Of a DNA stretch of 64,000 nucleotides, positions 1,949 through 46,700 are shown piece after piece. Position 1 is the stretch's first letter, and each line of letters begins with the position of its first letter. The translations under genes and the position numbers were made by a program. The stretch spans positions 248,001 through 312,000 of the forward strand of contig NIVC01000513.1 of the NCBI GenBank assembly GCA_002269645.1, given 5' to 3'. The DNA is from Macrostomum lignano. Lineage: Eukaryota. The notes beneath the pieces are model-generated. The model saw only the letters and a program-made list of their open reading frames with translations, did not search any database and was not told where the DNA came from.

Positions 1949-2407
1949 TTAGCCGGGGACGGTCGCTTTCTCTGCTCGCTTGAAGAACCAGTTGACTGTT
2001 GCTTTTTCTTGCGGATTACCGGTAGATATTTCCTTAAAATTTTTTTCAATTTTTCTTGGCGTCCCTGATAAGTTTAGAAAACGTTTGTGCTTCTTGAGCG
2101 TCGGTCCGCGTTCGTGTGAGCGTTCATACACCTGCATGCACACGTAGGGGCTGCAGTCGTTCATTTCTATGGGTCTCAAAATCATTCTGTATTTTCTGTT
2201 GAGATTTACATGAACGAAGTTCTGATTCTCATAGTGAACGAGACACATGTGCAGCGTGTTTTTTACATAATTTATTATTTTAGCAAAGCCAGCACTTTGC
2301 TCCAGCTGTATAATATATTCCGCTATATTTTTTATAGTAGATTTCAAATTTCTGTTTCTCTCGACTTCCGGCATTGGCCACTGGTTTTCCAGGAATCCAC
2401 AACGCAT
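1949..2407 (-). CDS. Uncharacterised nested-family protein, copy 1 (152 aa; C-terminal tail frameshifted relative to copy 3)
   Basis: Same upstream atgagtctgactca...cag|gtgcgacacc leader; YRMILRPIEMNDCSPYVCMQVYERSHE core. Confidence 0.75.
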   Translation of the reverse strand: MRCGFLENQWPMPEVERNRNLKSTIKNIAEYIIQLEQSAGFAKIINYVKNTLHMCLVHYENQNFVHVNLNRKYRMILRPIEMNDCSPYVCMQVYERSHERGPTLKKHKRFLNLSGTPRKIEKNFKEISTGNPQEKATVNWFFKRAEKATVPG

Positions 2408-2574
2408 TTCTTTGAATCGGTGTCGCACCTGTCAGTGAATAGCAATTAGGTAGGACTGAGTCAGACTCATGGTTAATAGCACAGAATAGCAGTGGCTTAG
2501 CCAAGGGGGGCCGCCCCCCTCTAATCGCCTGGGAGTGGGGTTGGGCGCGGCGGGTACCCAAAACCATGAGGCAA

Positions 2575-20200: not shown

Positions 20201-23200
20201 ATGTTTGAGAAATTTAAAATAAAAATTGTGCACAACAGTCAAAGACATTACAACACAAATTACACATGAAGTACACTTAAGCCTGACAGTGAACAAGCAC
20301 CATTCCATTCCAAGCTTGAATCCCTGTTAGTAACTAACTTACCAAACTCAACTCAATGCCCAATTTATGAGTTCAACTAGTACGTATTTGCAGTGAATTG
20401 TTTTCTGATAAAACAAAATAATTGATAGCCAGCCAACACGACAGGAGAAATATTCTGGAGATGTTAACTGATGTGTAACTGATTTTTGATAAGTATATAT
20501 TTGTAGTAATTTTAAAAGTTTCTAATAATTATTTAAGCTAATAGAAAAGAGGTAAATGGATAATTTTATTGAACTCTACGTGCACTAATAGTGAAAAAGC
20601 AAAACTACGAGTAGCTAAAACAATAGACAGGTGCTGAGCAAGGAAATTTGTAGCTAAGAGTTAACCATAAATGAATTTAAAATTAATTAAATATTAATAA
20701 AAGTGAGTTTATGACAAAGTTAGGCTCATGCCTCATCAGTTCTTTTTAGATTTCTTGGCGGCTTCTTGGCGGCACGTGCTGGTGGAATTTGCGGAATTAC
20801 CTCGAGTGTGTTCTGGGAAATTCTCCTCAGCTTTTTCTGGTGAAGAAGATTTGTTAAGAAAAGTTTTGTGCTCCTCGAGCGTCGGTACGTGCTCGTGTTG
20901 GCGTCGGTAAATCTCGATGCACACGTAGGTGCTGCCGTCATTCATTTGCACAGGTCTGAGAAGCATCCGGTACTCACTGTTTAAATCCACATACCAGAAT
21001 TTTTCACAGAAATACAGCTTCAGTTTCCATTCTCTCCATAGATACGCCATTATTTTAGCAAAGCGAGCATTTGGCTTCTGATCGCGAATGTAGTTCACGA
21101 TATTATTTACAGTCTGTTGCGCATTCTGGTCGCCCCCAAATGACTGGCTTGGCCACTCCTGGCCTCTTATATATCCATACCGCATTTTGAGTTGGTGGTC
21201 GCACCTGTTAGTGAATAGCAAGGTAAGACCGAGTCAGACTCATAATTAATATGGCAACCTGCGCCCGACGTTGGGGAGGCAAAAAGGAATAAAATACAGG
21301 TAGGCTATGACCTTGTATCAATATTATTTTTAGGAAAATGATGTTTAAAGCCTCCCTTTGAGCCATGGCTTAACCCTAACTGTCCTTTCGATCTGCGTCT
21401 ACTTCTCAGAAATTCCACATGAGCCTCGATATCTCAGCAATATCATGAGGGACTTGCTGAGATGTCAAGGCTTATGATGAATGCTGAAATGCTGCGGCTC
21501 ATTGGGGGGGGGGTTGCTGGGATTCCAAGGGTCAATTGGAAGCTGTTGGTAGGCCAAGCCACAGCCCACAGGTAGAGCAAAGGCAGAGTTTGGGCTGAGC
21601 CACGGCTTAAAGGGAAGCTTTTAACTTTTAGTTTATTAAAACATTTTAATTCCTCGCTTTCTTGTTGCCTCCGAAACGGGGGAAGGGCGCTGATTAGGAT
21701 AATAATAATGCCCATACAATTACAATACTTTAATTATGAAACTTTTGATTTGTTTTTTGAGATAAATTAATTTAATAATTTGATGTAATCTATGATATTA
21801 AATTAATGATTTACTCACCTTAACGGTGAATGTGTCCGTTGATGTTGCAGAAGAAGAATGCAGAAGCAAAAAGCCAGAAGCAAAAAGCTCTTCTGCAGGT
21901 AGGGCTTATCAGAAAGGTTATTAGTTAAAGTATTACACTAGAAGAAATGTCACTGCAAAACCTGTGTGAATTTTTATACCATTTTTCCGACGAATGGCAA
22001 GAGCTCCCATGGAAACCGCCTAGAACTTGGTGGGTATGAGAAGGTCTAACCGTTGCACAGGCCAGGGACTCCTAAAAATAGCATCACTAGAGATCTCTGG
22101 AAGTCCCTGTCTCGGCCCTGTTTGTGGGCACACGGATTGTGCTAAAATAATTTACATTAAGGACCACCCAAAAGCCATTTTTCTTGTCTGGTTTAGAAGG
22201 CCAATGATAGAATTCTGCCGCATCTAATTAAATCCCATCTAAAAATGTACATGGGATTTAATTCAACGCTATCGAGATTGTTCCCAAAAACAAGACATAA
22301 AATTAATATAAATGTACACTGAATACTTTCTGACGGTTGAATACTGCTTGAAGTTGACTGCTGTAAACTTTGCTGTCACTGTGACGGATGTCTCTCACTC
22401 ACAGTCACAACATCAGTTTGGAAACCAGCATTTTTCATTTCAATAAATAGGCCATGCACAAAAACATGACAACAAAGGCTAACAACGAGTTAACAAACAT
22501 GCGATAAAAAGAAATCTGCTATATGAATTACAGGTCGATCGTTGGCAGGTGTGGCAGACAGACTCATTGCGGAGCCTTCGGCAAGGTTCGAAGCAGAGTC
22601 TGCGACTTGCTGCGTTGTCAAGATATGCTAAACTATAAGATTGGTTATTCGTTTCCAATGCGAAAGCTTGCACGGCAGTAGATAATTATTGTTCATTCTT
22701 GTATCTAAGCACAAATTTTTATCACATTCAACTAGATGCCCCTAATCACATCTAGACAACGTGAACACATCTAGACAACGTGAACACATCTAGACACACC
22801 TGAACACATCTAGACACACCTGGACAATCTAGACACACCTGGACAATCTAGACACACCTGGGCAATCTAGACACACCTGGACATTTTCTAGACACACTTG
22901 GACATTATCTAGACATACCTGGGCACATTTAGACACACCTTGGATACATCTAGGCACACTTGGACACATCTATACATACCTGAACACAGCTAGACACACC
23001 TGGTCAGTGTAGTCACATCTATACACACCTGGACACATCTAGACATACCTAGACACATCTAGACACACCTGGACAGATCTGGACACATCCAGATACAAAT
23101 GGATACAACTAGACACACCTTGGATACACCTAGGCACACCTGGACAGATCTGGACACATCCAGATACAAATGGATACATCTAGACACACCTTGGATACAC

Positions 23201-28714: not shown

Positions 28715-31700
28715 CTGCGATTTAAAAAATAATTTTGATAAATTAATTTTTAATACAGTTAAACAAAATGCTCTACTGATAGTAGCTGAAGCCAGCGAAA
28801 TTATACTAAACGAGAAGCTTGCTTATGAAAACTCAGAGTCGGGCTTTTCCTGACACTAAACTTGACGTTTTTCCTGACACTAAATTTGACAGCTGACTTG
28901 GCATCAACTGACACTGCAATTTCGGTAATTTGTGACACTGTTCACTACTACCTGAAGCTCAATATGCTACTAACTGACACTCAATATGCTACTAACTGAC
29001 ACTCAATATGCTACTATCTGACACTCAATATGCTACTATCTGACACTCAATATGCTACTATCTGACACTCAATATGCTACTATCTGACACTCAATATGCT
29101 ACTATCTGACACTCAATATGCTACTATCTGACACTCAATATGCTACTATCTGACACTCAATATGCTACTATCTGACACTCAATATGCTACTATCTGACAC
29201 TCAATATGCTACTATCTGACACTCAATATGCTACTATCTGACACTCAATATGCTACTATCTGACACTCAATATGCTACTATCTGACACTCAATATGCTAC
29301 TATCTGACACTCAATATGCTACTATCTGACACTCAATATGCTACTATCTGACACTCAATATGCTACTATCTGACACTCAATATGCTACTATCTGACACTC
29401 AATATGCTACTATCTGACACTCAATATGCTACTATCTGACACTCAATATGCTACTATCTGACACTCAATATGCTACTATCTGACACTCAATATGCTACTA
29501 ACTGACACTCAATATGCTACTATCTGACACTCAATATGCTACTATCTGACACTCAATATGCTACTAACTGACACTCAATATGCTACTATCTGACACTCAA
29601 TATGCTACTATCTGACACTCAATATGCTACTATCTGACACTCAATATGCTACTGACACTCAATATGCTACTGACACTCAATATGCTACTGACACTCAATA
29701 TGCTACTGACACTCAATATGCTACTGACACTCAATATGCTACTATCTGACACTCAATATGCTACTATCTGACACTCAATATGCTACTGACACTCAATATG
29801 CTACTGACACTCAATATGCTACTGACACTCAATATGCTACTGACACTCAATATGCTACTGACACTCAATATGCTACTGACACTCAATATGCTACTGACAC
29901 TCAATATGCTACTGACACTCAATATGCTACTGACACTCAATATGCTACTATCTGACACTCAATATGCTACTATCTGACACTCAATATGCTACTGACACTC
30001 AATATGCTACTGACACTCAATATGCTACTGACACTCAATATGCTACTGACACTCAATATGCTACTGACACTCAATATGCTACTGACACTCAATATGCTAC
30101 TGACACTCAATATGCTACCATCTGACACTCAATATGCTACTATCTGACACTCAATATGCTACTATCTGACACTCAATATGCTACTATCTGACACTCAATA
30201 TGCTACTATCTGACACTCAATATGCTACTATCTGACACTCAATATGCTACTATCTGACACTCAATATGTTACTATCTGACACTCAATATGCTACTATCTG
30301 ACACTCAATATGCTACTATCTGACACTCAGGCGGCATGAACTCACAGGCACAGCGTAGATGAACATGGCCAGCAGCAGGCCGAAAATGACCACCAGAAAG
30401 GCACCGAGGATGTACCACTTGTAGTTCTTCCAAACGATGTGCTTGAAGGTCTTCCACGGAGAGGTGAACCACAGGAAGGAGGTCTCTGGGCGCCTGGGTG
30501 AGGTGAAGGGTTTGCTATGCAGAAATACTGCCACGTGTTGAAGGCATGGGAAAGATTTGGGATTTGGGACGGTTTCGGGATTTGGGGGATTTAATAGATT
30601 TAGGGAGATTTATAGGGGAGATTTGGAGAGATTTGAGGTATTTGGGGGAGATTTGAGGGATTTGGGGGGATTTGACGGATTTGAGGTAGATTTGAGGGAA
30701 TGGGGAGATTTGAGGGATTTGGGGAGATTTGAGGGATTGAGGGATGTTGCGAAGATTTAGGGAGAAACTACTTATTAGACTTTAGTCAGTAGTGCAAGTA
30801 GGCCATGAATACAACAAGACAAGAAGACCCGCAGCTCACTTGGGCGGCTCCAGATGCGGGTTCTCGTTGGGCTCGTCTTGGCCGAAACCGGCGGGACGAA
30901 GCTGCGCCTCTTCGACCGTCAGCAGCTCCAGCTCCATCTCCACCTTGCCCTGCCGATGCGCGAGTTTGGTACCAGGGAGAGGAGAATCAGTGTGCAGAAC
31001 CAACCAGCTTCTCAGCGAGGCAATCTCAACCCTACTTCTCCCCCAATCTCAACCCTACTTCTCTCCCAATCTCAACCCGACTTCTCACTCAATCTCAACC
31101 CTACTTCTCTCCCAAACTCAACCCTACTTCTCCCCCAATCTCAACCCTACTTCTCAACCAAACTCAACCCTACTTCCCTCCCAATCTCAACCCTACTTCT
31201 CTTCCAATCTCAACCCTACTTCTCACCCAATCTCAACCCTAACTCTCTCCTAATCTCAACCCTACTTCTCAATAAATCTCAACCCTACTTCTCACCCAGT
31301 CTCAACCCTACGTTTCAACCTCCCCATTCCCACAGCTTCATGGATCTCACGGTCAGTCTCTCGCCATCGGGCTTCTCATCGTTGATGCAGGGCCAGTAGC
31401 CGTAGGCGCGCTTGCAGTCGAACAGGTTGATCATTTTGACGCTCTTGCCGTAGGCGGGCAGCTGCTCAACTCCGCACTGTCGCGACTTCTTCTTCGGCGC
31501 CGGCATGCTGGACAAGTTGAGCTCCAAGGTGCCAAGGAAGTCGTCAGCCGAGAACTTGTCATTGTCCCAGATCTGCACGACCAGGTTCGGCGGGATGCAC
31601 TGCTCAGTGGCGTCAAGAGACCAGAAGTGCTCCTTCTTCTTCACCACCATGACGTTCTCGGCGGGCAGGTAGTCCATAGGGAATTTGAAGCGCCAGTTGA

Positions 31701-34700
31701 AGTTGCCGACCCCGTCAAGGCTGCGGTAGTGCACGTCTGTCTCCTGCTTCTCGTCAAGGCCCGCCAGCCAGCCCTGGGGGATGTGGAAGGGGATGTTGAG
31801 CTCTGATTACTAGGGAGATTACTGAGATATCAAGGCTCATGGGGGAATTGCGGAGGTGTCATGGCTCAAAGGGGAATTGCGGAGGTGTCATGGCTCATAG
31901 GGGAATTGCGGAGGTGTCATGGCTCATAGGGGAATCGCGGAGGTGTCATGGCTCATAGGGGAATCGCGGAGGTGTCATGGCTCATAGGGGAATTGCTGAG
32001 ATGACCCCTCAACACACACTAATCCAATCCCAAAGCCGACACTAATCCCATCCCCAGAACCTACACACTAATACCATCCCCAGAACCCACACTAATCCCA
32101 TCCCCAGAACCCACTCTAATCCCATCCCCAGAACCCACACTAATCCCATCCCCAGAACCCACACTAATCCCATCCCCAGAACCCACACTAATCCCATCCC
32201 CAGAACCCACACTAATCCCATCCCCAGAACCCACACTAATCCCATCCCCAGAACCCACACTAATCCCATCCCCAGAACCCACACTAATCCCATACCCAAA
32301 ACCCACACTAATCCCATCCCCAGAACCCACACTAATCCCATCCCCAGAACCCACACTAATCCCATCCCCAGAACCCACACTAATCTCATCCCCAGAACCC
32401 ACACTAATCCCATCCCCAGAACCTACACTAATCCCATCCCCAGAAACCACACACTAATCCCATCCCCAGAACCCACACACTAATCCCATCCCCAGAACCC
32501 ACACTAATCCAATCCCCAGAACCTACACTAATACCATCCCCAAAACCCACACACTAATCCCATCCCCAAAACCCACACACTAATCCAATCCCAAAGCCGA
32601 CACTAATACCCATCCCCAGAACCCACACTAATCCCATCCCCAGAACCTACACACTAATCCCATCCCCAGAACCCACACACTAATCCCATCCCCAGAACCC
32701 ACACACTAATCCCATCCCCAAAACCCAGACACTAATCCCATCCCCAGAACCCACAAACTAATCCCATCCCCAGAACCCACTCTAATCCCATCTCCAGAAC
32801 CCACACTAATCTCATCCCCAGAACCCACACTAATCCCATCCCCAGAACCCACCCTAATCCCATCCCCAGAACCCACACTAATCCCATCCCCAGAACCCAC
32901 ACTAATCCCATCCCCAGAACCCACACTAATCCCATCCCCAGAACCCACACTAATCCCATCCCCAGAACCCACACTAATCCCATCCCCAGAACCTACACTA
33001 ATCCCATACCCAAAACCCACACACTAATCCCATCCCCAGAACCCACACTAATCCCATCCCCAGAACCTACACTAATCCCATCCCCAGAACCCACACTAAT
33101 CCCATCCCCAGAACCCACACTAATCCCATCCCCAAAACCTACACTAATCCCATCCCCAGAAACAACACACTAATCCCATCCCCAGAACCCACACACTAAT
33201 CCCATCCTCAGAACCCATACTAATCCCATCCCCAGAACCCACACTAATCCCATCCCCAGAACCTACACTAATCCCATCCCCAGAACCCACACTAATCCCA
33301 TCCCCAGAACCCACACTAATCCCATCCCCAGAAATCACACTAATCCCATCCCCAAAACCCACACACTAATCCCATCCCCAGAACCCACACACTAATCCAA
33401 TCCCCAGAGCTGACACTAATCCCATCCCCAGAACCCACACTAATCCCATCCCCAGAACCCACACACTAATCCCATCCTCAGAACCCATACTAATCCCATC
33501 CCCAGAACCCACACTAATCCCATCCCCAGAACCTACACTAATCCCATCCCCAGAACCCACACACTAATCCCATCCCCAGAACCCACACTAATCCCATCCC
33601 CAGAAATCACACTAATCCCATCCCCAAAACCCACACACTAATCCCATCCCCAGAACCCACACACTAATCCAATCCCCAGAGCTGACACTAATCCCATCCC
33701 CAGAACCCACACTAATCCCATCCCCAGAACCCACACACTAATCCCATCCCCAGAACTCACACTAATCCCATCCCCAGAACCCACACTAATCCCATCCCCA
33801 GAACCCACACTAATCCCATCCCCAGAACCCACACTAATCCCATCCCCAGTACCCACACTAATCCCATTCCCAGAACCTAGGCAATCTGCCCAGCTGCTCA
33901 CCCGGACATAGATGTCGGACATCTGCTCCCCAGTGATGGACGTCTCCTCCAGCACGACGTCCTTGGTGTTCCACACGATGACTCGCAGTTCGTATTTCTT
34001 GGGCTCGCGAGGTCGAACATCGGTTGGCGGAGGCAGGGTGCCAGCCAAGCAGGGGAAAATGTCCACCCAGCACTGCAGCTTGCCCTGCTCGATGCCCGGC
34101 TGCAGCGGAGAGTACAGCGGCCGGGTCTCGACGTGCTCCTTCACCAGAGGCAGGCAGTTGAGCACGTGCAGCGCCAGGCGCTCGTCCTCCGGTCCAAAGT
34201 GCGGGTTGGACTTTCTGGTGGGCTCAAAGCTGTCCAAGTAGAAGGTCTTGGCGCCCAGTCTCAAGCAGTCGGCGCCTTCGAATCGGGGCTCAGGGAGGAA
34301 ATTTTTTGAGCAAAAATCGGCCAGAATCTCTTTGGGTTTTTGAACGTCACGCCACTGATTCGGACCTTCGACGTAGTAGGACTGCGGCAGGCCCACTCGG
34401 GCGTTGAACTTGCTCAGGTAGCGGTTCTCCAGGTCGATCACCGTCTCCCCGATTACGTCATCGGAGCTGAGGAAGTCGTAGTCCTTGACGCGGATGTACA
34501 GGTCTTTGTCGATTGGCAAGATGCACTTCAGCTCGAATATTCTGCGAGTGTGGGGTTCAGCGCTGGCTTGAGGATCAGGGATTTGAGGATTGGGGATTTG
34601 AGGATCAGGGATTTGAGGATCTGGGATTTGAGGATCAGGGATTTGAGGATCAGGAATGTGAGGATCAGGGATCTGAGGATTAGGGATTTGAGGATAGGGA

Positions 34701-37700
34701 TTTGAGAATCAGGGATTTGAGGATCAGGGATGTGAGGATTGGGGATTTGAGAATCAGGGATCTGAGGATTAGAGATTTGAGGATCAGGGATTTGAGAATG
34801 AGGGATTTGAGAATCAGGGATTTGAGGTTTAGGGATGTGAGGATTGGGGATTTAAGAATCAGGGATCTGAGGATTAGGGATTTGAGGATCGAGGATCTGA
34901 GGATTAGAGATTTGAGAATCAGGGATTTGAGAATGAGGGATTTGAGGATCAGAGATTTGAGGATCCCGGATTTGAGGATCAGAGATTTGAAGATCAGAGA
35001 TTTGAGGATCAGAGATTTGAGGATCAGGGATTTAAGGATCAGAGATTTAATGATCAGGTATTTGAGGATCAGAGATTTGAGGATCAGGGATTTGAGGATT
35101 GGAGATTTGAGGATCAGGGATTTAAGGATCAGAGATTTAATGATCAGGTATTTGAGGATCAGAGATTTGAGGATCAGAGATTTGAGAATGAGGGATTTGA
35201 GGATCAGAGATTTGAGGACCCCGGATTTGAGGATCAGAGATTTGAGGATCAGGGATCTGAGGATCAGGGATTTAAGAATCAGGGATTTTAAGATCACAGA
35301 TTTAATGATCAGGGACTTGAGGATCGGAGATTTAAGGATCAGAGATTTGAGGATCAGAGATTTGATGATCAGGAATGTGAGGAACAGGGATTTGAGTATC
35401 AGGGATCTGAGGATTAGGGATTTGAGGATCGGGGATCTGAGGATTAGAGATTTGAGGATCAGGGATCTGAGGATCCCGGATTTGAGGATCAGGGATTTTA
35501 AGATCACAGATTTAATGATCAGGGACTTGAGGATCGGAGATTTAAGGATCAGAGATTTGAGGATCAGAGGTTTAAGAATCAGGGATTTTAAGATCACAGA
35601 TTTAATGATCAGGGACTTGAGGATCGGAGATTTAAGGATCAGAGATTTGAGGATCAGAGATTTAAGAATCAGGGATTTGAGGATCAGAGATTTAAGAATC
35701 AGGGATTTTAAGATCACAGATTCAATGATCAGGGACTTGAGGATCGGAGATTTAAGGATCAGAGATTTGAGGATCAGGGATTTGAGAATCAGAGATTTGA
35801 GGATCAGAGATTTGAGGATCAGAGATTTGAGGATCAGGGATCTGAGGATTAGAGATTTGAGGATCAGGGATCTGAGGATTAGAGATTTGAGGATCAGGGA
35901 TCTGAGGATTAGAGATTTGAGGATCAGAGATTTGAGGATCAGAGATTTAAGAATCAGGGATTTGAAGATCACAGATTTAATGATCAGGGATTTAAGGATC
36001 AGAGATTTAAGGATCAGAGATTTGAGGATCAGAGATTTGAGGATCAGGGATTTGAGGATCTGGGATTTTGGGATCAGGGATTTGAGGATCAGCAATTTGA
36101 GGATCAGCGCTTCATCATTCGTGAACCGTAAATAAGAGCAAAGCTACTTGAGCCAATCAGGCCGGCACTCACTGTCCAAACACGGGGTTCAGAGTATTCG
36201 GGATGTACTTGTCCTTGCTGTCCATCTTTCGCTTGCCCAGTTCGATTTCAACGTACGGATCGGCCAGCCCGCTCGGGTCGTTAGGCTGCAGATCGAAGGA
36301 CTTGATGACGTACAGGCGGACGGTGCAGTCCACCGGGCTCGAGTCCATCCTGCCTTTGCCCAGCTGCCGCAGCGGCATGGGGGCGCCGAAGTCGTCCGGC
36401 AGCGGGTAGATCCTGAACGAGCCTTTGAACTCGCCGACGATGTTGCCCTCCTCGTCGTCAAGATTTTTGCCCCGCACGAAGCCGAAGGTGTCGCAGAAGT
36501 CGTTGAAATCGTGGAACGACTCGGCGCTCTCCAACGAGGTCGTGTACACCTTCATGGTGTCGTAGCCCATGTCCACGTACTTGCGGCACTTGCTGAGGTC
36601 TCCTGTGGAGGCGTAGTACTTCGACCACCAGTCGATGTCTTCGTCTACTTGGGAGAGGTCGATCTAAAACAACAAAAGATGCTGAGTGACTGAGCCTCAG
36701 TGAATCTGGGATGCTGAGTGACTCTGAGAGACTCAGTGAATCTGGGATGCTGAGTGACTAAGGGACTCAGTGAATCTGGGATGCTGAGTGACTGAGCCTC
36801 AGTGAATCTGGGATGCTGAGTGACTGAGAGACTCAGTGAAACTGGAATGCTGAGTGACTGATAGACTCAGTGAATCTGGGATGCTGAGTGACTGAGCCTC
36901 AGTGAATCTGGGATGCTGAGTGACTCTGAAAGACTCAGTGAATCTGGGATGCTGAGTGACTAAGGGACTCAGTGAATCTGGGATGCTGAGTGACTGAGCC
37001 TCAGTGAATCTGGGATGCTGAGTGACTCTGAGAGACTCAGTGAATCTGGGATGCTGAGTGACTGACTGACTGACTCAGTGAATCTGGGATGCTGAGTGAC
37101 TCTGAGAGACTCAGTGAATCTGGGATGCTGAGTGACTGACTGACTGACTCAGTGAATCTGGGATGCTGAGTGACTCTGAGAGACTCAGTGAATCTGGGAT
37201 GCTGAGTGACTGACTGACTGACTCAGTGAATCTGGGATGCTGAGTGACTCTGAGAGACTCAGTGAATCTGGGATGCTGAGTGACTGACTGACTGACTCAG
37301 TGAATCTGGGATGCTGAGTGACTCTGAGAGACTCAGTGAATCTGGGATGCTGAGTGACTCAGTAGAATCTGAGACATTGCAGAATGTTTTAGAAATATGT
37401 TTAAGAAATTTAAAATAAAAATCAGTACATACAATTGCACAACAGTCAAAGACATTACAACACAAATTACACATGAAGTACACTTAAGCCTGACAGTGAA
37501 CAAGCACCATCCCATTCCAAGCTTGAATCCCTGTTAGTAACTAACTTACCAAACTCAACTCAATGCCCAATTTATGAGTTCAACTAGTACGTATTTGCAG
37601 TGAATTGTTTTCTGATAAAACAAAATAATTGATAGCCAGCCAACAGGACAAGAGAAATATTCTGGAGATGTTAACTGATGTGCAACTGATTTTTGATAAA

Positions 37701-40700
37701 TATATTTTTGTAGTTATTTTAAAAGTTTCTAATAATTATTTAAGCTGATAAAAAGGAAGAAGTGCAAGGAAAATTTTATTGAAATCTACGTGTACTAATA
37801 GAGGAAAAAAGCAAAACTATGAGTAGCTAAAACAGTAGAGATAGATACTGAGCAAGGAAATATATAATTAAAATACATTTTACCTAAGAATAAACTATAT
37901 AAAATGTATTTATGTCAGAGTTTGGCTCATCAGTTCTTTTTAGGTTTCTTGGCGGCTTCTTGGCGGCCGGATTTAGCCGGCGACGGTCGCTTTCTCTGCT
38001 CGCGTGAAGAACCTGCTGACGGTTGCTGTTCTTGCGGACTACCTCGAAATATTTCCGGGAAATTCTTCTCGGCTCTTTCTGGTAAAGATTTGTTGAGAAA
38101 TATTTTGTTCTTATCGTGCGTCGGTCCGTACTCGTGCGTGCGTCGGTAAATCTCCATGCACACGTAGGTGCTGCCGTCCCTCAGTTGCACAGGTCTGAGA
38201 AGCATCCGGTAACTTCTGCTTAGATTTACAGAATAGTAGTCCTGATCCCCACAGGGAACCAGATTCAGATTCAGTGTGTCTTGTAGTTTTGCCATTATTT
38301 CAGCAAAGTGAGCACTTGGCTCCTGCGCATAAATATAGTTAACGATTTCATCTACAGTGACTTGCGTAGTATGGGTGCCCCCGAATGGTGGGTCTCGCCA
38401 ACCCTGGTCTTTTATAAATCCACACCGCATTTTGAGTCGGTGTCGCACCTGTCAGTGAATAGCAAAGTAGGACTGAGTCAGACTCATGGCGTACTAGCAA
38501 TCAATGCCCTCCTTTCTTGGAGGCAACACAAAATCGACAATTTTTTTAATTAACTACATGTAGCTTCTGGCCTTGTACAGTCGCTATAGCTAGTAATTAC
38601 AATGGGGGTCGCCATGGTAAACCCGAAAAAATTACAGCTCCGAAAGCACTTCCTATCATAAATCCGAAATATCATAAACCCGAAATATCATAAACCCGAA
38701 ATATCATAACTCTGAAATTACTAGCAGGGCCCATCATAAATCCGAAATATCATAAACCCGAAATATCATAAACACGAAATATCATAAACACGAAATATCA
38801 TAACTCCGAAATATCATAAATCCGAAATATCATAAACCCGAAATATCATAAACACGAAATATCATAACTCCGAAAACCAAAATAGTGTTGGACATGGCTA
38901 GAACTTTTGGAGTTATGATATTTCGGAGTTATGACATTTCGCAGTTATGATGGCAATTCCCCATAAGTCTTGATATCTCAGCATTTTTCCAAATGAACCT
39001 TTAAATCATAGCAATTAATCACTGGAAAATTTCTGATCAAACGGTGCAAGTTTCGTGATAATCTTTTTTATGACATCAATCCCATAAATACCCACGAGTA
39101 CCTACCTATAGAGACAAACCATTTTAGTATAGTGAATAATGTCTTCATCCTTGTCCTTGCATCTCATACCCGCTTTCAATATTCCTCAATATACTCTTAA
39201 AGTGTTTTACACCACGAATTCTCATACCTAACTATGCTCAGTGGTCAGTATGGTGTATAAGAAATGCACAGCAAAAAATGTATTCAATTAATGCTAATCT
39301 CTACATATAAAAATAAAAACTCTTCTATATGCAAGGGTTCGGCAAACTCATGTGCCCGCGAAGCCTCTCTATCCGCCGTATCCGCCCCTCGGGTCTTTTG
39401 AAACTTCACAATAGCAATCTTCTCAGCTCTCAGCTCTCTTCTCTCTTTGAGGCAGCGCTGAGCCTCGCACATCGCTTACTCTGGTTGACTGCACTGTCAA
39501 TGACTGTACGCTTGTTACGAATCATCAACACTTAGCCTTATTCTCGCACCAATACTCGCGCACCAGCGCTTATTGACTTTCGTATCGTCAATTGCTCAAA
39601 ATAGACTTTGTGTGCGCAACAACAATGTACAGTTTAAAAAAAAACCATGAACTAAGCGTATTGTCGAACATAAAAGATTGATTGAGGAATCGCTAAAATA
39701 TTAAGACTCAATGGGAAATATCTGGGATATCAAGGTTCAGGGGGGGATGTCTATACTAGTGTGACTCTTAGGGAGAATTGCGTCAAGGCTTACGGGGGGA
39801 TTGCTGAGATGTCAAGGCTAACGGGGGGATTGCTGAGATGTCAAGGCTAACGGGGGATTGCTGAGATGTCAAGGCTAACGGGGGATTGCTGAGATGTCAA
39901 GGCTAACGGGGAGATTGCTGAGATGTCAAGGCTAACGGGGGGATTGCTGAGATGTCAAGGCTCACGGGGGGATTGCTGAGATGTCAAGGATTACGGGGGG
40001 ATTGCTGAGATGGCAAGGATTACGGGGGGATTGCTGAGATGTCAAGGCTAACGGGGGGATTGCTGAGATGTCAAGGCTCACGGGGGGATTGCTGAGATGT
40101 CAAGGCTTACGGGGGGATTGCTGAGATGTCAAGGCTAACGGGGAATTGCTGAGATGTCAAGGATTACGGGGGGATTGCTGAGATGTCAAGGCTAACGGGG
40201 GATTGCTGAGATGTCAAGGATTACGGGGGATTGCTGAGATGTCAAGGCTAACGGGGGGATTGTTGAGATGTCAAGGCTAACGGGGGATTGCTGAGATGTC
40301 AAGGCTAACGGGGGATTGCTGAGATGTCAAGGCTAACGGGGGATTGCTGAGATGTCAAGGCTAACGGGGGATTGCTGAGATGTCAAGGCTTACGGGGGGA
40401 TTGCTGAGATGTCAAGGCTCACGGGGGGATTGCTGAGATGTCAAGGATTACGGGGGATTGCTGAGATGTCAAGGCTAACGGGGGATTGCTGAGATGTCAA
40501 GGATTACGGGGGGATTGCTGAGATGTCAAGGCTAACGGGGGGATTGTTGAGATGTCAAGGCTAACGGGGGGATTGCTGAGATGTCAAGGCTAACGGGGGG
40601 ATTGCTGAGATGTCAAGGCTAACGGGGGGATTGCTGAGATGTCAAGGCTAACGGGGGGATTGCTGAGATGTCAAGGCTTACGGGGGGATTGTTGAGATGT

Positions 40701-43700
40701 CAAGGCTGGGTTGCTGAGATGTCAAAGCTCACGTGGGATGCTGATATCTGAGGCAAGGTAGCTGGATTCAGGACTGACGCATTTTGCTTTGAACTTCATA
40801 ATACTAGCGATAGCGACTGCACAAGATCAAAAGCTACATGTAGTTTATTATCAAGCACTTTAGTTCCTTTTCTGTTGCCTCCCAAACGGGATGGGGCGCT
40901 GATTGGTAGTAACAACCTAATAACTTAATTAGAATAATACTCATACAATTACAGTACTTTATGATGCAGTTGCTTTGTTTTTAGATTATATTAATTAATT
41001 TAGTAATTCGATACATTAGAAAATATTGAATAAATGATTTACTTACCCTAACGGTGTGTGTGTCCGTTGATGTTGCAGAAGAATGAAGAAGCAAAAATCT
41101 CTTCTGCAGGTAGGGCTTAATAGAAAGGCTGCTAGTTAAAGTATCAAACTAGAAAAGAATGTCTCAAAGCTCTATTTCGCTCAAAAATCTTTATGAATGA
41201 CTGAGACGACCTCTGCTTCTGCATTCCGCTCATTGGCTCCCATGGAAACCGCCTAGAACTTGAAGGGTATGGGAAAGTCTAACCATTGCACAGGCCAGGG
41301 ACTCCTAAAAATAGCATCACTAGAGATCTCTGGAAGTCCCTGCCCCGGCTCTGTTCGCGGGCACACGGATTTCGCTAAAATAATTTACATTAAGGACCAC
41401 CCAAAAGCCATTTTTCTTGTCTGGTTCAGAAGGCCAATGATAGAAGTCTGCCGCATCTAATTAAATCCCATCTAAAGAATGTACATGGGATTTTATTCAA
41501 CGCTATCAAGCTTGTTCCCAACAACAAGACATAAAATTAATATAAATGTACACTGAATACTTTCTGACGATTGAATACTGCTTGAAGTTGACTGCTGTAA
41601 ACTTTGCTGTCACTGTGACGAATGTCTCTCACTCACAGTCACAACATCAGTTTGGAAACCAGCATTTTTCATTTCAATAAATAGGCCATGCACAAAAACA
41701 TGACAACAAAGGCTAACAACGAGTTAACAAACATGCGATAAAAAGAAATCTGCTATATGAATTACAGGTCGATCGTTGGCAGGTGTGGCAGACAGACTCA
41801 TTGCGGAGCCTTCGGCAAGGTTCGAAGCAGAGTCTGCGACTTGCTGGGTTGTCAAGAAATGCTAAACTATAAGATTGGTTATTCGTTTCCAATGCGAAAG
41901 CTTGCACGGCAGTATATAATTATTGTTCATTCTTGTATCTAAGCACAAATTTTTATCACATTCAACTAGATGCTCCTAATCACATCTAGACAACGTGAAC
42001 ACATCTAGACACACCTGGACAATCTAGACACACTTGGACATTTTCTAGACACACTTGGACATTATCTAGACACACTTGGACATTTTCTAGACACACTTGG
42101 ACATTTTCTAGACACACTTGGACATTATCTAGACACACTTGGACATTTTCTAGACACACTTGGACATTTTCTAGACACACTTGGACATTATCTAGACATA
42201 CCTGGGCACATTTAGACACACCTTGGATACACCTAGGCACACTTGGACACATCTATACATACCTGAACACAGCTAGACACACCTGGTCAGTGTAGTCACA
42301 TCTATACACACCTGGACACATCTAGACATACCTAGACACATCTAGACACACCTGGACAGATCTGGACACATCCAGATACAAATGGATACAACTAGACACA
42401 CCTTGGATACACCTAGGCACACCTGGACACAGCCAGACACACCTGGACACAGCCAGACACACCTGGACGCAGCTAGACACACCTGGGCACAGCCAGACAC
42501 AATTGGACACAGCCAGACACACCTGGACACAGCCAGACACACCTGGGCACAGCCAGACACACCTGGACACAGCCAGACACACCTGGGCACAGCCAGACAC
42601 ACTTGGACACAGATATACACAGCTAACTACACCCAAACGGATGTAGGCTCATGAATACTAGCAAATCCTGAAAATACAAGACAAAAAATTGGTTGAATTT
42701 TTAACAGACACAGCAGCAAGCAGTGAGCACACCAACTCCTACCTTCATCCGCATGTTCAGCACTGCTGTGTTGCCCCTAGGAGCAGAGCCGACTGGTCGC
42801 TGAGCAGAATGGGCGTTTAATAGAGCTGGAAAAGCGAAAATGGAAAAAAGGGGGTTACTCACTAGAATACTGGATGGGGCGTCACTGAAGGGGGTCAGCG
42901 GTCCCCCAAAAACGCTGAAGAGGGTCAGCGGCCTCCAAAAACACTGAAGGGGGTCAGCGGCCTCCAAAAACACGGAAGGGGTCAGCGGCCTCCAAAAACA
43001 CTGAAGGGGGTCAGCGGCCTCCAAAAACACTGAAGAGGGTCAGCGGCCTCCAAAAACACTGAAGGGGTCAGCGGCCTCCAAAAACACTGAAGGGGTCAGC
43101 GGCCTCCAAAAACACTGAAGGGGTCAGCGGCCTCCAAAAACACTGAAGGGGGTCAGCGGCCCCATAAAACACTGAAAGGGGTCAGCGGCCTCCAAAAACA
43201 CTGAAGGGGGTCAGCGGCCCCATAAAACACTGAAGGGGGTCAGCGGCCTCCAAAAACACTGAAGGGGGTCAGCGGCCCCATAAAACACTGAAGGGGGTCA
43301 GCGGCCTCTAAAAACACTGAAGAGGGTCAGCGGCCCCATAAAACACTGAAGGGGGTCAGCGGACTCCAAAAACACTGAAAGGGGTCAGCGGACTCCAAAA
43401 ACACTGAAAGGGGTCAGCGGACTCCAAAAACACTGAAGAGGGTCAGAGCCCCCCCCCCTCCCCAGAAACAGCTTACCTGGGAAGTTGGCAAACGCGTCGT
43501 ACTCCTCGTTAATCGGCTCAGTGCGGTAATCGTCCAAGCACTTGATCACGTGCAGCCCGACCATGGGCTTGCGTCCGAACTGGCGATGGTCCCGAATCCG
43601 GATGTTCATGGGCGGCAAATACAGCGTCTCCTTCGGCAGCATGACGTCCATGAACAGCAGAGTCTCTTGGAAGTTCGGATTTCTCTTAGTGTTGGCGATG

Positions 43701-46700
43701 ATGTCCGTGGTTGCCAAGTGGCCGCCAATCTCGAACTCGACGCTGGGAGAAGTGACGGACATCAGCTGGAAGGCCTGCATGTTGCGCACGCCCCAGGACA
43801 GGATCTCGATGCCCGTCCGTTGCAGCACTGGCTTCACGCCGTCTGGCACAACGAAAATGTCGGCGCCCCGTTTTGAAGGCGTCGGCGGCAGCGGCTCACC
43901 GGTGAGTAGGAAGAGCTCGAATGCCGCCAGCAGCTCGCCGCCCTCCTTGCTGCCTGGAGGTGAAGCATGGGTTGTACACCTGGTCTACTGGTACACCTGG
44001 TCAGCTGGTACACCTGGTTTACTGGTACACCTGGCCTACTGTTTACTGGTACACCTGGCCTACTGTTTACTGGTACACCTGCTCAGCTGGTACACCTGGT
44101 CAACTGGTACACCTGGTCAACTGGTACATCTGGTCAGCTGGTACATCTGGTCTACTGGTACACCTGGTCTAATGGTATACCTTGGTCTAATGGTACACCT
44201 GGTCCAATGGTACACCTGGTCCAATGGTACACCTGGTCCAATGGTACACCTGGTCTAATGGTACACCTGGTCCAATGGTACACCTGGTCTACTTAAAAAA
44301 AGCCCCTTTGTTTGGTCAATGCAAAACATAATCAATCGGAAACCACTCAAAATCAATTGATCCGCATTTAAATGAACAAAAAAGCAGAGTCGCAAATTTC
44401 ATTCCAACGCACCCTTAGTGATGGAGTGCCACTGCAGCACAGGCCTGCGCTTTTCCGTAGGGCTCAGCTTCACCATGGGCTGCACAACGGCCCGGCCAAG
44501 GAACTCGTCCTCGCCCAGCTGATCGTAGTCGAAAATCTCCACCACAACCGGGGGCGGATTGTCAGCCAGACTCTTCGGATCGCTGAACGCTTCGACGCTG
44601 TCAAAGATGAGAGTCTGGTCCCAGGTGGGGCACAGGGTCTTGTCAATCCGCTCGGTGACCCCCGACCGGGTGTGGAAGATCACCCTGGCGTAGGGGTCGG
44701 ACAGACCCGTCTGATCGCCGGCAAGCAGGTCGCGGGCCTGGAACACGTAGGCTCGGAGCTGCCAGCGGCGCGGCTCTGCGGAGGCATGGGCCGGGTTTGA
44801 CGGATGGAAGGTCCCGGGTTCGATTCACTTAGGGAATGGACAGTACGTGGGAGTCAGGGAACGGGTAATTAGTAAGTCATGAGTTCGATTCTGTCTAGGG
44901 AACAGGTAGAAGTGGAAGGTCCAGGGTTCGAGTCCGGCTAGGGAACGGATGGAAAGTCCCGGGTTCGAGTCCGGCTAAGGAACGGATGGAAGGTCCCGGG
45001 TTCGAGTCAGGCTAGGGAACGGATGGAAGGTCCAGGGTTCGAGTCTGGCTAGGGAACGGATGAAAGGTCCAGGGTTCGAGTCAGGCTAGGGAACGGATGG
45101 AAGGTCCAGGGTTCGAGTCTGGCTAGGGAACGGATGAAAGGTCCAGGGTTCGAGTCTGGCTAGGTAACGGATGGAAGGTCCAGGGTTCGAGTCCGGCTAG
45201 GGAACGGATGGAAAGTCCCGGGTTCGAGTCCGGCTAAGGAACGGATGGAAGGTCCAGGGTTCGAGTCCGGCTAGGTAACGGATGGAAGGTCCCGGGTTCG
45301 AGTCCGGCTAGGGAACGGTGGGAAGGTCTTAGGCATTACAGTAAGCATCAACTTATTAAAGCCTATAAAAAATGAAAACTCTGTCTGTCTGTTGTCTGTC
45401 TTTGTACAAATTACTTCACAATGGACTCTTAAACCGCTTAACCAAATGACACCAAATCAGGGAGTCGGGACTATGATGTAAACTTAAGCTCATAAGGTGG
45501 AGTCCTTAATTGTCCCTTTGCTTGTTCTCTCCCATCCCAGGTCCAATTTTTGTAATTTTTTTTGCTAAAACAGCTTTCTGGTGTCACTGTGAGCAGAATG
45601 ACGCATCAGTTGTGTACATAGGTTACCCGGGCTTCACTTTACGAGCTCAAGTTGACAGGCCCTTTTCGAGTCTCAAAGTTAATCCTAAACGGCGCTGTGC
45701 ACTTTTAAAGTTAGTCTCTTTTTTTCAACGAGGAAACCACATCCAACCTCCGCTTGCCAAAAGGTCAAATAGTCAAATAGGTCAAATAGGCCTACAATTG
45801 ACCAACTTTCGGCTGCCATACTAATAAGTTTGCTCCACGTGAAGCGATTGACTTTAAACTTGACACAATTCTTCATTGGCTCATTCTCTGCCTAAATGTA
45901 AATTCTCAATACTGTAGCTCAATCAGAACGGAAACTGTAAGTATGTGAAGTCTGTCTGCTTTTTCTGGTGTTTGTGCCGCTCACTCACTCATTCCTCCCC
46001 GCCCAGACCAAGGGTCAGGGGATAGGGGCTCAGTGTACATTAGCAATGTACATTACCTCAAGCAGTCAATTGGGCCCGATAAAGAATCCACTGCGGGCCA
46101 GAAGAGAGTGGTCAGGAGAGAGAACAGACGATTAGAAAAGAGAGGAGAAGTGAGTGAGAGTATGAGAGAAAAGATAGAAGATAAGAGGAGAGAAGAGGGG
46201 CGAGAGGAGGGGGAGAGAGGGGAGAGAAGAAATAGAGAAGAGACAAGAGAGGAGAGAGACAAAGAGAGACAAGGGGAAAGACAAGGCTTAGTTTAGGTGA
46301 AACTAAGCAACCGTACGGTCAGGGGATCCGCAGACCGAGTACCGAGTCCCACAACCCCTGGCCTTAACAATCATCAAACTCGATCACAACCTCCTCCGTC
46401 CGCCCGCAGTATAGTGTGCTCAGGGAGGGTCGCCATCAGAAACCCGAAATATCACAAACCCGAAATATCACAAACCCGAAATAGCACAAACCCGAAATAT
46501 CACAAACCCGAAATATCATAAACTCAAAATATCAGAAACCCGAAATATCACAAACCCGAAATATCACAAACCCGAAATATCAGAAACCCGAAATATCACA
46601 AACCCGAAATATCAGAAACCCGAAATATCATAAACCCGAAATATCACAAACCCGAAATATCGCAAACCCGAAATATCACAAACCCGAAATATCGCAAACC

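What the first reader, a model, noticed from the sequence alone, without database searches (positions are those of the whole stretch)
37930..38448. Fast-evolving three-member small-protein family nested in a ferlin intron, diverging faster than the flanking non-coding DNA
Seen: three open minus-strand ORFs (1949-2407, 20736-21185, 37930-38430). They share an acceptor 18-21 nt before an aaATG, a core YRM(L/I)LRP..(D)GS.YVC.E(I/V)Y.R.HE, FLN.S..PE.AE.NF, and in copies 2 and 3 a lysine-rich tail and AATAAA. By eye copies 2 and 3 are only about half identical as proteins, with a hypervariable middle ([17 protein letters not shown] vs [18 protein letters not shown]). The ferlin exons around them and the intron at 20165-20500 / 37360-37720 are nearly identical. 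Inference: diversifying selection on a conflict gene (defence, toxin, selfish element or reproduction) amplified together with the ferlin 3' block. The layout of two helices followed by Y-S-V-N-L...Y-R-M-L-L...V-C-x-E-I-Y..T-H loosely recalls RelE/HigB/ParE-superfamily RNase folds; this is unverified. The basic tail may be an NLS.
Basis: partly seen in the sequence, partly recalled or inferred. Interest (0 to 1): 0.88.

Follow-up and report, generated by a model that had tools for sequence, protein, structure and literature searches.

The report
Orphan toxin-like gene trio in flatworm ferlin
Three diverged copies of a small flatworm-only gene sit inside a duplicated ferlin gene; they are real coding genes, their predicted shape loosely resembles a bacterial RelE/HigB toxin, and positive selection is possible but unproven.

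Summary
The window is Macrostomum lignano (Mlig_3_7, NIVC01000513.1). The three minus-strand ORFs exist as described: A 1949-2407, B 20736-21185, C 37930-38430. They lie at the same relative place in tandem 18-19 kb duplicates of the 3' block of a dysferlin-like ferlin gene. They are genuinely coding. Random substitution at the observed divergence leaves the frame open in under 1% of trials, protein-level indels between B and C are in frame, and hydrophobic residues are preferentially kept. No relative was found among 1.84 billion representative proteins. AlphaFold gives a beta-alpha-alpha-beta-beta-beta-beta core. Foldseek ranks HigB, YoeB, YafQ and ParE toxins first, but weakly (best E 5e-3, TM 0.52). 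Sequence-profile tests fail. The CDS (74-79% identity, B vs C) is more diverged than the 3'UTR (83%), the leader (91%) and the distal flanks (93-99%). However, dN/dS is 1.17 (CI 0.75-1.94), the sequence just upstream is unalignable, and the copy that stands out changes along the gene. This fits gene conversion homogenising the ferlin block at least as well as diversifying selection. Copy A has a frameshifted tail and no poly(A) signal. Expression and function are untested.

The parts
37930..38430 (-). ORF C, 166 aa (ATG 38430 to stop 37930). Predicted RelE/HigB-like core at aa 1-100, helical segment at aa 106-123, and a disordered basic tail with a bipartite-NLS-like RKRP..KKPKK.
38431..38487 (-). 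Conserved 57-nt leader of C: ATGAGTCTGACTCAGTCCTACTTTGCTATTCACTGACAG|GTGCGACACCGACTCAAA. It reads as branch point (CTGAC), pyrimidine tract and CAG acceptor, with the first exon base at 38448. It also reads as an 11-codon u[14 protein letters not shown].
   Evidence: 88-96% identical in all pairs and the best conserved part of the module. It occurs only at the three ORFs. No special RNA fold.
37775..37929 (-). 3'UTR of C up to AATAAA (37775-37780).
   Evidence: 83% identical to B's 3'UTR.
20736..21185 (-). ORF B, 149 aa. It equals database protein P0001, the only copy called as a gene.
21186..21243 (-). Leader of B. The acceptor-like CAG lies 19 nt before the ATG, and the uORF stop is TAA instead of TGA.
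20565..20735 (-). 3'UTR of B up to AATAAA (20565-20570).
1949..2407 (-). ORF A, 152 aa, the most diverged copy. A 1-nt insertion frameshifts the C-terminal tail, and the ancestral tail frame survives as 1927-2049. No AATAAA lies downstream.
2408..2470 (-). Leader of A. CAG lies 21 nt before the ATG, and the uORF carries an in-frame 3-nt insertion.
43477..43972 (-). Ferlin C2-domain exon E1 of the full-length gene, upstream of ORF C. Its donor is phase 1. The duplicate E1' lies at about 25389-25893.
41047..41103 (-). Candidate small exon Es, flanked by splice sites (57 nt in C; 74 nt in B at 21819-21892). It could be a ferlin linker exon or a 5' non-coding exon of the nested gene.
   Evidence: The lengths differ by 17 nt, so the frame fits E1 to E2 only in B.
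36172..36663 (-). Ferlin exon E2 (IDWWSKYY... plus the start of a C2 domain), downstream of ORF C. The duplicate E2' lies at 18624-19127.
30331..34567 (-). Ferlin exons E3 (33878-34567, dsrm_Ferlin), E4 (31318-31806, C2) and E5 (30331-30594, Ferlin_C with the TM segment). Duplicates lie at 17637-18323, 10976-11503 and 10207-10425.
41729..42053 (-). Intronic X block, shared by all three units (also at 22495-22818 and 6633-6960). It shows that A belongs to a third, degenerate unit.
   Evidence: Identity: B-C 98.4%, A-B 91.8%, A-C 91.4%.

Best explanation
The three ORFs are paralogues of a Macrostomum-restricted small protein-coding gene of 149-166 aa.

Location and copy number. The gene lies, in the same orientation, inside an intron of a dysferlin-like ferlin gene, between the C2 exon E1 (with the candidate small exon Es) and the IDWWSKYY exon E2. 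It was copied passively when the 18-19 kb 3' block of the ferlin was tandemly duplicated. This left two full units and one degenerate third unit.

Gene anatomy (shown). Each copy is a roughly 700-bp module:
1. a strongly conserved leader of about 60 nt with branch point, pyrimidine tract and CAG, 18-21 nt before the ATG;
2. the CDS;
3. a 3'UTR of 150-170 nt ending in AATAAA (B and C only).

Expression (inferred). The mRNA is most likely made by splicing onto that acceptor. This could be SL trans-splicing, which affects about 30% of M. lignano genes, or cis-splicing from an upstream non-coding exon.

Protein (predicted). It has a compact core: an N-terminal strand, a two-helix hairpin and a four-stranded antiparallel sheet. 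That is the topology of RelE/HigB/YoeB/ParE toxins. A conserved helical segment and a variable basic tail follow.

Mechanism (inferred, about 25% likely). The core acts as an RNA-directed, RelE-like, possibly ribosome-associated endonuclease or RNA binder. The invariant residues R75, R79, Y95, R97, H99 and E100 on strands beta3 and beta4 would do the work.

Evolution. Selection keeps the frame open and the hydrophobic core intact, while the rest changes at about the local neutral rate. The striking contrast with the 97-99% identical flanks arises mainly because gene conversion keeps homogenising the ferlin block while the module has stayed diverged. Some positive selection in the helix-2 to strand-2 region is possible but unproven. 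Copy A (frameshifted tail, no poly(A) signal, transposon insertions next to it) is probably decaying.
For: Organism and host gene. The record is GCA_002269645.1 NIVC01000513.1, which is M. lignano. Ferlin domains: dsrm_Ferlin 3e-27, Ferlin_C 1e-13, plus C2 domains.

Tandem units. Self-comparison and exon pairs define them.

Coding constraint.
- The ORF remains open in 0.75-0.85% (B-C level) and 0.17-0.19% (A level) of simulations.
- All B-C protein-level indels are in frame.
- Hydrophobic residues are conserved in 31/45 positions against 40/82 for the others (OR 2.3, p 0.04). Neutral simulation gives 50% for both.
- Core dN/dS is 0.37-0.39 against A.

Leader. It is 88-96% identical in all pairs, whereas the CDS is 67-79%.

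Fold.
- Model C has a core pLDDT of about 80 and model A a mean pLDDT of 75. Both have the same topology.
- For model C, roughly 40 of the top 50 Foldseek PDB hits are RelE-superfamily toxins. The best is HigB 9chn_B (E 4.9e-3, prob 0.98, TM 0.52).
- HigB and YoeB/ParE recur as the best near-full-length RelE-type matches for model A.
- Phage 'ParE-like toxin domain' proteins appear among the BFVD hits.
- Pfam ParE_like scores E 0.035.

Gene-conversion mosaic.
- Ferlin exon dS rises from 0.024 to 0.153 along the unit, with dN <=0.03, even in the partial copy.
- The X block is 98.4% identical for B-C but 91-92% against A.
- The outlier copy switches along the CDS (Fisher p 4e-5; max-chi2 permutation p 0.017).

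Trans-splicing background. See PMC8629364.
Against: - No expression data could be consulted, so splicing, trans-splicing and polyadenylation are inferred from motifs only.
- The acceptor context TGACAG/TAACAG does not fit the reported [T/C]TNCAG trans-splice motif at position -5.
- The fold evidence is borderline. No Foldseek hit has E <=1e-3, TM is <=0.52, and model A's top hit is Atg10, with HigB only at E 0.1. Both models rest on the same 3-sequence alignment.
- hhalign against a 26-sequence HigB profile gives probability 0.2%. A profile search of PDB sequences finds only a lipocalin at E 1.3. NCBIfam, PADLOC and PHROGs give nothing.
- No antitoxin-like partner ORF is conserved.
- dN/dS of about 1 for B-C is also what a recently inactivated gene would show.
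- The CDS is more diverged than its own 3'UTR. Gene conversion alone does not explain this; it could reflect real positive selection.
Confidence: 0.5

Rival explanations
1. One reading: recurrent diversifying (positive) selection on a conflict gene (toxin, defence, selfish element or reproduction). This selection would be the main reason the ORFs are far more diverged than the ferlin block they were duplicated with.
For: - B-C identity is lowest in the CDS (74-79%). It is 83% in the 3'UTR, 91% in the leader and 93-99% in the flanks.
- dN for B-C is 0.33. Ferlin synonymous divergence is 0.02-0.15, and pS at conserved codons of the ORF is 0.16.
- dN is 0.72 in aa 45-68.
- The frame is kept open despite this turnover.
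- Reproduction-related, homologue-poor genes are known to evolve fast in Macrostomum (PMC7336406, PMC8662610).
Against: - dN/dS is 1.17 with CI 0.75-1.94, so it is not above 1. It is 0.67-0.68 against A.
- Substitutions are equal at the three codon positions.
- Non-coding parts of the module are also elevated, and the sequence upstream of the leader is unalignable.
- The mosaic signal and the graded ferlin dS show that the flanks are not a valid neutral clock.
- Only three sequences are available, there are no polymorphism data, and the hypervariable stretch includes an indel that makes alignment uncertain.
Confidence: 0.25
2. The ORFs are functionless relics or proto-genes, drifting neutrally inside intronic and intergenic DNA. 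On this view the predicted fold and the toxin resemblance are artefacts.
For: - dN/dS is about 1 for B-C.
- No homologue was found in 5.8 billion clusters or 1.84 billion representatives.
- Only B is called as a gene, and no Logan or other source holds the proteins.
- A has a frameshifted tail, no poly(A) signal and neighbouring transposon fragments.
- Fold matches are statistically weak.
Against: - All three frames remaining open has a probability of roughly 1e-5 under random substitution.
- Indels are in frame, the hydrophobic core is preferentially conserved, and core dN/dS is 0.38 against A.
- The leader is strongly conserved.
- AF2 gives pLDDT 80-93 over the core from only three sequences.
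Confidence: 0.15
3. The module is an alternative 3'-terminal exon of the ferlin gene. Splicing from an upstream ferlin exon onto the CAG acceptor would then yield a truncated ferlin that ends in, or is fused to, this domain.
For: - The module has the same strand as the ferlin, a conserved acceptor and its own AATAAA.
- The frame is open from the acceptor in C and A (QVRHRLKM...).
- Es has a good donor (phase 0 in B).
Against: - From the phase-1 donor of E1 the reading frame hits a stop after about 35 codons.
- In B the acceptor-to-ATG distance is 19 nt, so the frame is not preserved.
- The conserved ATG with a constant MRCG/MRYG start, and a separate gene call for B, suggest an independent cistron.
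- B and A sit in units without the ferlin 5' part.
Confidence: 0.07
4. The module is the ORF of a transposable element, or was carried by one.
For: - The three-way homology is confined to a roughly 700-bp unit with sharp ends.
- A GIY-YIG (Penelope-like) fragment lies 180 nt downstream of ORF A.
- The genome is very repeat-rich.
Against: - The copies occupy the same relative position in the duplicated units, with the X block upstream in each. They arose by segmental duplication, not insertion.
- No terminal repeats were found, and no transposon domain appears in Pfam.
- No further copies or fragments occur in the 64 kb.
- The GIY-YIG fragment is absent from B and C.
Confidence: 0.04

Closest known systems
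RelE/ParE-superfamily type II toxins, especially HigB (Proteus vulgaris, PDB 4mct/4px8/9chn), YoeB and YafQ
   Same: - The size of the core is similar (about 95-100 aa).
- The predicted strand, helix-hairpin and antiparallel-sheet topology is the same.
- Basic and His/Glu/Tyr residues are invariant on the last two strands.
- These toxins are the best structural matches.
- From established knowledge: RelE can also cleave mRNA on eukaryotic ribosomes, so such a fold could act in an animal cell.
   Different: - No significant sequence or profile similarity.
- The gene is in an animal nuclear genome with splice and poly(A) signals.
- No adjacent antitoxin gene.
- An extra conserved helical segment and a basic tail.
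- Catalytic equivalence is untested.
Taxonomically restricted, rapidly evolving genes of Macrostomum (for example the reproduction-related transcripts of PMC7336406, PMC8662610 and PMC10092323)
   Same: No detectable homologues outside the lineage, high amino-acid turnover, and copy-number change.
   Different: Tissue and expression of this family are unknown. No link to reproduction was tested here.
Same-strand nested intronic genes and SL trans-spliced genes or operons of M. lignano (PMC8629364)
   Same: - An acceptor lies shortly upstream of the ATG without an obvious nearby donor.
- The SL (…TTGCATG) would supply an ATG that is in frame in C and A.
- About 30% of M. lignano genes are trans-spliced.
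   Different: - The acceptor hexamer deviates from the reported [T/C]TNCAG.
- No SL reads were examined.
- Distances to the upstream cistron exceed the roughly 1 kb operon criterion.
Eukaryotic toxin-antidote or killer elements (C. elegans peel-1/zeel-1, S. pombe wtf). This is a functional analogy only.
   Same: Lineage-restricted, fast-evolving, tandemly amplified small genes with a possible toxic activity.
   Different: No antidote partner, no genetic evidence of drive, and no homology. This is speculation, not a tested resemblance.

Membership tests
RelE/ParE toxin superfamily | Compact fold: N-terminal beta-strand, two-helix hairpin, then a 3-4-stranded antiparallel sheet. | tested here: met
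   - Two AF2 models were made (C: core pLDDT about 80; A: mean 75). DSSP order is E-H-H-E-E-E-E in both.
- Foldseek PDB for model C: HigB 9chn_B at E 4.9e-3, prob 0.98, TM(target) 0.52. RelE-superfamily toxins dominate the top 50.
- Model A is weaker, with HigB at E 0.1-0.3.
- This is a predicted structure only and the significance is borderline.
RelE/ParE toxin superfamily | Significant match to a family sequence model (Pfam ParE_toxin, HigB-like, YafQ, ParE_like and similar). | tested here: not met
   - Best hit is PF24732 ParE_like at E 0.035 and 14.5 bits, against a cut-off of 24.4. It covers 18 residues and appears for copy C and the consensus only.
- hhalign against a 26-member HigB alignment gives probability 0.2%.
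- NCBIfam, PADLOC and PHROGs give no hit.
- A PDB profile search gives no toxin.
RelE/ParE toxin superfamily | Cognate antitoxin gene immediately adjacent, in a bicistronic module. | tested here: not met
   tblastx between the three units finds no second conserved ORF. Only an 11-12-codon uORF precedes the ATG.
RelE/ParE toxin superfamily | Catalytic residues at equivalent positions (for example HigB H54/D90/Y91/H92; YoeB E46/R65/H83/Y84; RelE R61/R81/Y87). | tested here: inconclusive
   R75, R79, Y95, R97, H99 and E100 are invariant on the last two strands. No reliable residue-level alignment to any toxin was obtained, and model coordinates could not be inspected.
Ferlin (host gene) | Multiple C2 domains, the ferlin dsRBD-like domain, and a C-terminal Ferlin_C with a TM anchor. 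| tested here: met
   - Pfam: dsrm_Ferlin 3e-27, Ferlin_C 9.7e-14, and C2 in four exons.
- The gene model of the public record carries C2, dsrm_Ferlin and Ferlin_C.
- The closest proteins are flatworm and vertebrate dysferlin-like.
SL trans-spliced genes of M. lignano | SL-containing reads at an acceptor; the enriched motif is [T/C]TNCAG. | not testable with these tools
   CAG is present in all three copies, with an upstream CTGAC and a pyrimidine tract. The hexamer is TGACAG/TAACAG, and no RNA data are available.
Transposable-element ORF | Terminal repeats or target-site duplications, a transposon protein domain, and dispersed copies. | tested here: not met
   No transposon domain. The copies are syntenic within the duplicated units. 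No extra copies occur in the window. The rest of the genome could not be searched.

The most novel reading that the evidence does not exclude
An animal nuclear genome encodes a family of RelE/HigB-fold endoribonuclease toxins that has diverged beyond sequence recognition. The family has no linked antitoxin. It is expressed from within a ferlin intron, possibly carved out of the host pre-mRNA by SL trans-splicing and intronic polyadenylation. It evolves under diversifying selection as part of a genetic conflict, such as a toxin-antidote or drive element, or an antiviral or anti-transposon effector.
Probability: 0.12. Interest if true: 0.8.

Novelty: new variant of a known kind. Interest (0 to 1): 0.45.

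Why it matters
RelE/ParE-fold toxins are regarded as prokaryotic, plasmid and phage tools. If the fold and an RNase activity were confirmed, this would be a rare, expressed member of that fold in an animal. It would lack an antitoxin, evolve fast and be copy-number variable, and it would be a lead for toxin-antidote or defence biology in a tractable flatworm model. It would also be a neat case of a gene nested in, and amplified with, its host gene.

Even without that, the locus illustrates a methodological point. Comparing a paralogue's divergence with its flanks can mislead when gene conversion homogenises the flanks.

If the ORFs prove untranscribed, the finding reduces to an ordinary orphan ORF in a repeat-rich genome.

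Tried and rejected
1. Word-indexed search of 5.8 billion protein clusters with ORF C, and an exhaustive HMMER profile search of 1.84 billion representatives. Only ORF B itself (P0001) was found.
2. Pfam, NCBIfam, PADLOC, PHROGs, and PDB sequence searches with single sequences and with a profile. Nothing passed threshold.
3. hhalign of the family against a HigB alignment built from verified homologues of PDB 4mct_B. No signal.
4. Rfam scan of the whole window, and an RNA fold of the leader. Nothing.
5. tblastx search for a conserved partner (antitoxin) ORF. None.
6. Attempt to reach homeologous M. lignano ferlin loci through a ferlin-exon protein search. It returned only other species.
7. Exact look-up of ORFs C and A. 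They are not on record.
8. Literature searches for RelE/ParE homologues in animals and for the Txp40 structure. Uninformative.
9. Ferlin-fusion reading from exon E1. Rejected, because the phase-1 donor leads to a stop after about 35 codons.
10. Relative-rate test of B against C. Not significant (51 vs 35 sites, p 0.11).
Full report
**Source and setting.** ORF B is identical to a gene called on NCBI record GCA_002269645.1 / NIVC01000513.1. Several papers identify that record as the Mlig_3_7 assembly of the flatworm Macrostomum lignano. Tandem repeats make up 46% of the window.

The minus strand carries a dysferlin-like ferlin gene.
- Exons run from about 63.7 kb down to the transmembrane exon at 30331-30594.
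- Pfam confirms dsrm_Ferlin (3e-27), Ferlin_C (1e-13) and C2 domains.
- The nearest proteins are flatworm and vertebrate dysferlin-like.

Self-comparison and exon pairing show that the 3' block E1-(Es)-E2-E3-E4-E5 is tandemly duplicated.
- Unit 1 spans about 44.4-26.2 kb and is part of the full-length gene.
- Unit 2 spans about 26.2-7.0 kb and is a partial copy.
- A degenerate third unit keeps only the intronic X block (6633-6960) and ORF A.

**Checking the observation.**
- A CAG preceded by CTGAC and a pyrimidine tract lies 18, 19 and 21 nt before the ATG in C, B and A.
- AATAAA follows the stop by 150 nt in C and 166 nt in B. A has none.
- B and C are 55% identical as proteins. A is 43-46% identical to them.
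- Intron 20165-20540 / 37360-37750 is 97-99% identical.
- tblastn finds no further copy in the window.

**Are these genes?** Random substitution at the observed level leaves the frame open in only 0.75-0.85% of trials at the B-C level. The figure is 0.17-0.19% at the A level. The other five frames carry 4-12 stops each.
- The protein-level gaps between B and C (16, 2 and 1 residues) are all in frame.
- Hydrophobic residues are conserved more often than others between B and C: 31/45 against 40/82, OR 2.3, p 0.04. Neutral simulation predicts about 50% for both classes.
- Against A, the core (aa 68-125) has dN/dS 0.37-0.39.

The frame and the core are therefore under selection, or were until very recently. 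Copy A shows decay:
- a 1-nt insertion shifts its C-terminal tail, and the ancestral tail frame persists at 1927-2049;
- it lacks a poly(A) signal;
- a GIY-YIG (Penelope-like) fragment lies just downstream.

**Anatomy of the module.** Three-way homology is confined to about 700 bp. The best conserved part is not the CDS but a roughly 60-nt leader, ATGAGTCTGACTCAGTCCTAC(Y)TTGCTATTCACTRACAG|GTGCGAC..AAA-ATG. It is 88-96% identical in every pair, whereas the CDS is 67-79%. It occurs nowhere else in the window. Homology between all copies stops abruptly at its 5' end.

The leader can be read in two ways.
1. As a 3' splice site, with branch point CTGAC about 28 nt upstream, a pyrimidine tract and CAG.
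2. As a conserved 11-12-codon uORF (MSLTQSY[F/L][I]AIH*). A's 3-nt insertion is in frame, and B's G-to-A change turns TGA into TAA.

M. lignano trans-splices about 30% of its genes with an SL that ends in ATG (PMC8629364). That ATG would be in frame with the ORF in C and A, but not in B. The acceptor hexamer (TGACAG/TAACAG) does not match the reported [T/C]TNCAG. No RNA data were available, so the mode of expression is inferred.

A small segment flanked by splice sites (Es: B 21819-21892, 74 nt; C 41047-41103, 57 nt) lies upstream. It is either a ferlin linker exon or a non-coding first exon of the nested gene. Its length fits the E1 (phase 1) to E2 (phase 0) frame only in B.

Splicing from E1 directly onto the module would run into a stop after about 35 codons. 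The ORF is therefore not a simple ferlin extension.

**What the protein looks like.** No relative was found.
- The only hit among 5.8 billion clusters is ORF B itself.
- The same holds for an exhaustive profile search of 1.84 billion representatives.
- Family libraries give one sub-threshold hit: Pfam ParE_like, E 0.035, 18 residues over [16 protein letters not shown]. Nothing else appears.

AlphaFold with the three-sequence alignment gives a confident core. Copy C has pLDDT about 80 over residues 20-100. Copy A has a mean of 75, with blocks up to 93. Both have strand, helix, helix and four strands in that order. A helical segment and a disordered tail follow.

Foldseek results are suggestive but weak.
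- For model C against the PDB, the list is headed by P. vulgaris HigB (9chn_B: E 4.9e-3, prob 0.98, TM 0.52). It is dominated by HigB, YoeB, YafQ, RelE, ParE and HP0894.
- For model A, HigB and YoeB/ParE are again the best near-full-length RelE-type matches, but only at E 0.1-0.3. The top hit there is Atg10, and many short local matches to metallo-beta-lactamase hairpins also appear.
- The viral library returns phage 'ParE-like toxin domain' proteins among weak hits.
- hhalign of the family against a 26-member HigB alignment finds nothing. That alignment was built from a sequence verified as identical to PDB 4mct_B.

The fold-level resemblance to RelE/ParE toxins is therefore plausible. I rate it at about 55-60%. 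Sequence-level membership fails, and there is no partner ORF. Invariant R75, R79, Y95, R97, H99 and E100 on the last two strands have the right chemistry for a RelE-type active site, but equivalence could not be tested. The tail of C resembles a bipartite NLS (RKRP-12 aa-KKPKK). It is truncated in B and frameshifted in A.

**How fast, and why.** Nei-Gojobori estimates are as follows.

| Pair | dS | dN | dN/dS | Bootstrap CI |
|---|---|---|---|---|
| B-C | 0.28 | 0.33 | 1.17 | 0.75-1.94 |
| A-C | 0.73 | 0.50 | 0.68 | 0.42-1.06 |
| A-B | 0.76 | 0.51 | 0.67 | 0.38-1.10 |

All three codon positions differ equally between B and C (0.26, 0.27, 0.25). Ferlin exons of the two units differ by dS 0.024 (E1), 0.080, 0.125, 0.137 and 0.153 (E5), with dN <=0.03.

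Segment identities for B against C:

| Segment | Identity B-C |
|---|---|
| X block | 98.4% |
| DNA beyond the poly(A) signal | 93%, rising to 97-99% |
| Leader | 91% |
| 3'UTR | 83% |
| CDS | 79% (74% codon-aligned) |
| Upstream of the leader | unalignable |

Three things argue that the flanks are not a fair clock.
1. The ferlin dS gradient, and the near-perfect conservation of exons in a partial and presumably non-functional copy, indicate ongoing gene conversion.
2. The ratio of B-C to A-x divergence is about 0.19 in the X block but about 0.65 in the CDS.
3. The copy that stands out changes along the CDS. A is the outlier in the N-terminal part and the core. B is the outlier in the hypervariable middle and the tail (Fisher p 4e-5 on a-priori blocks; max-chi2 permutation p 0.017). 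The leader groups A with C.

This mosaic fits conversion or recombination among paralogues, or region-specific acceleration in B. Three sequences cannot separate the two. The CDS being more diverged than its own 3'UTR, and dN of 0.72 in aa 45-68, leave room for genuine positive selection, but it is not demonstrated. The relative-rate test of B against C is not significant.

**Verdict.** This is a real, lineage-restricted, rapidly changing small-protein family. It is nested in the same orientation in a ferlin intron and multiplied with the host's 3' block. Its predicted fold is tentatively RelE/HigB-like. It has no sequence-level family membership, no antitoxin, and unknown expression. The fold guess is cautiously supported. 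The diversifying-selection inference is possible but has a strong rival in gene conversion of the flanks. I rate the finding as moderately interesting. The toxin-in-an-animal reading would be notable, but it rests on borderline structural evidence.

Noticed in passing
window 10207-25893 (-) against 30331-43972 (-): The partial second copy of the ferlin 3' block keeps all five exons open and nearly identical in protein to the full-length gene (dN 0.003-0.03, dS 0.024-0.153, rising from E1 to E5). This suggests ongoing gene conversion, or a functional short ferlin.
   Followed up: partly
window 14231-15931 (+): Two adjacent plus-strand ORFs carry a DnaJ domain (E 2.6e-7) and a TatD-related DNase domain (E 1e-8). 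They lie in a roughly 5-kb segment between E3' and E4' of unit 2. Unit 1 has only tandem repeats at that place, so this may be an inserted gene or a mobile element.
   Followed up: partly
window 1514-1768 (-) and 81-1204 (+): A GIY-YIG nuclease fragment (Penelope-like element type; Pfam E 1.7e-4) lies just downstream of ORF A. Further ORFs at 238-1079 look recombinase-like by eye but have no Pfam hit. Together they look like transposon debris replacing A's 3' flank.
   Followed up: partly
window 38452-38487, 21208-21243, 2432-2470 (-): A conserved 11-12-codon upstream ORF (MSLTQSY[F/L][I]AIH*) sits in the leader of all three copies. It has an in-frame 3-nt insertion in A and a stop-to-stop change (TGA to TAA) in B. 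It could gate translation, or it could be a by-product of splice-site conservation.
   Followed up: partly
window 41047-41103 and 21819-21892 (-): This is a candidate small exon with good acceptor and donor sites. It is 74 nt in unit 2 but 57 nt in unit 1, because of a 17-nt internal duplication or deletion. It can therefore keep the ferlin frame between E1 and E2 only in the partial copy. The cause may be an assembly indel, an alternative exon, or a non-coding exon of the nested gene.
   Followed up: partly
whole window, for example 53063-56060, 56565-58609, 32015-33877, 34568-36107: Tandem minisatellite arrays make up 46% of the 64 kb (29.5 kb). Many lie inside ferlin introns, and some are shared between the duplicated units with different copy numbers.
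   Followed up: no
window 38448, 2428, 21204 (-): If the M. lignano spliced leader (which ends in ...TTGCATG) were joined at the CAG acceptor, its ATG would be in frame with the ORF in C and A. That would add MVRHRLK or MVRHRFKE. In B it would be out of frame and would create a 33-codon overlapping uORF.
   Followed up: no
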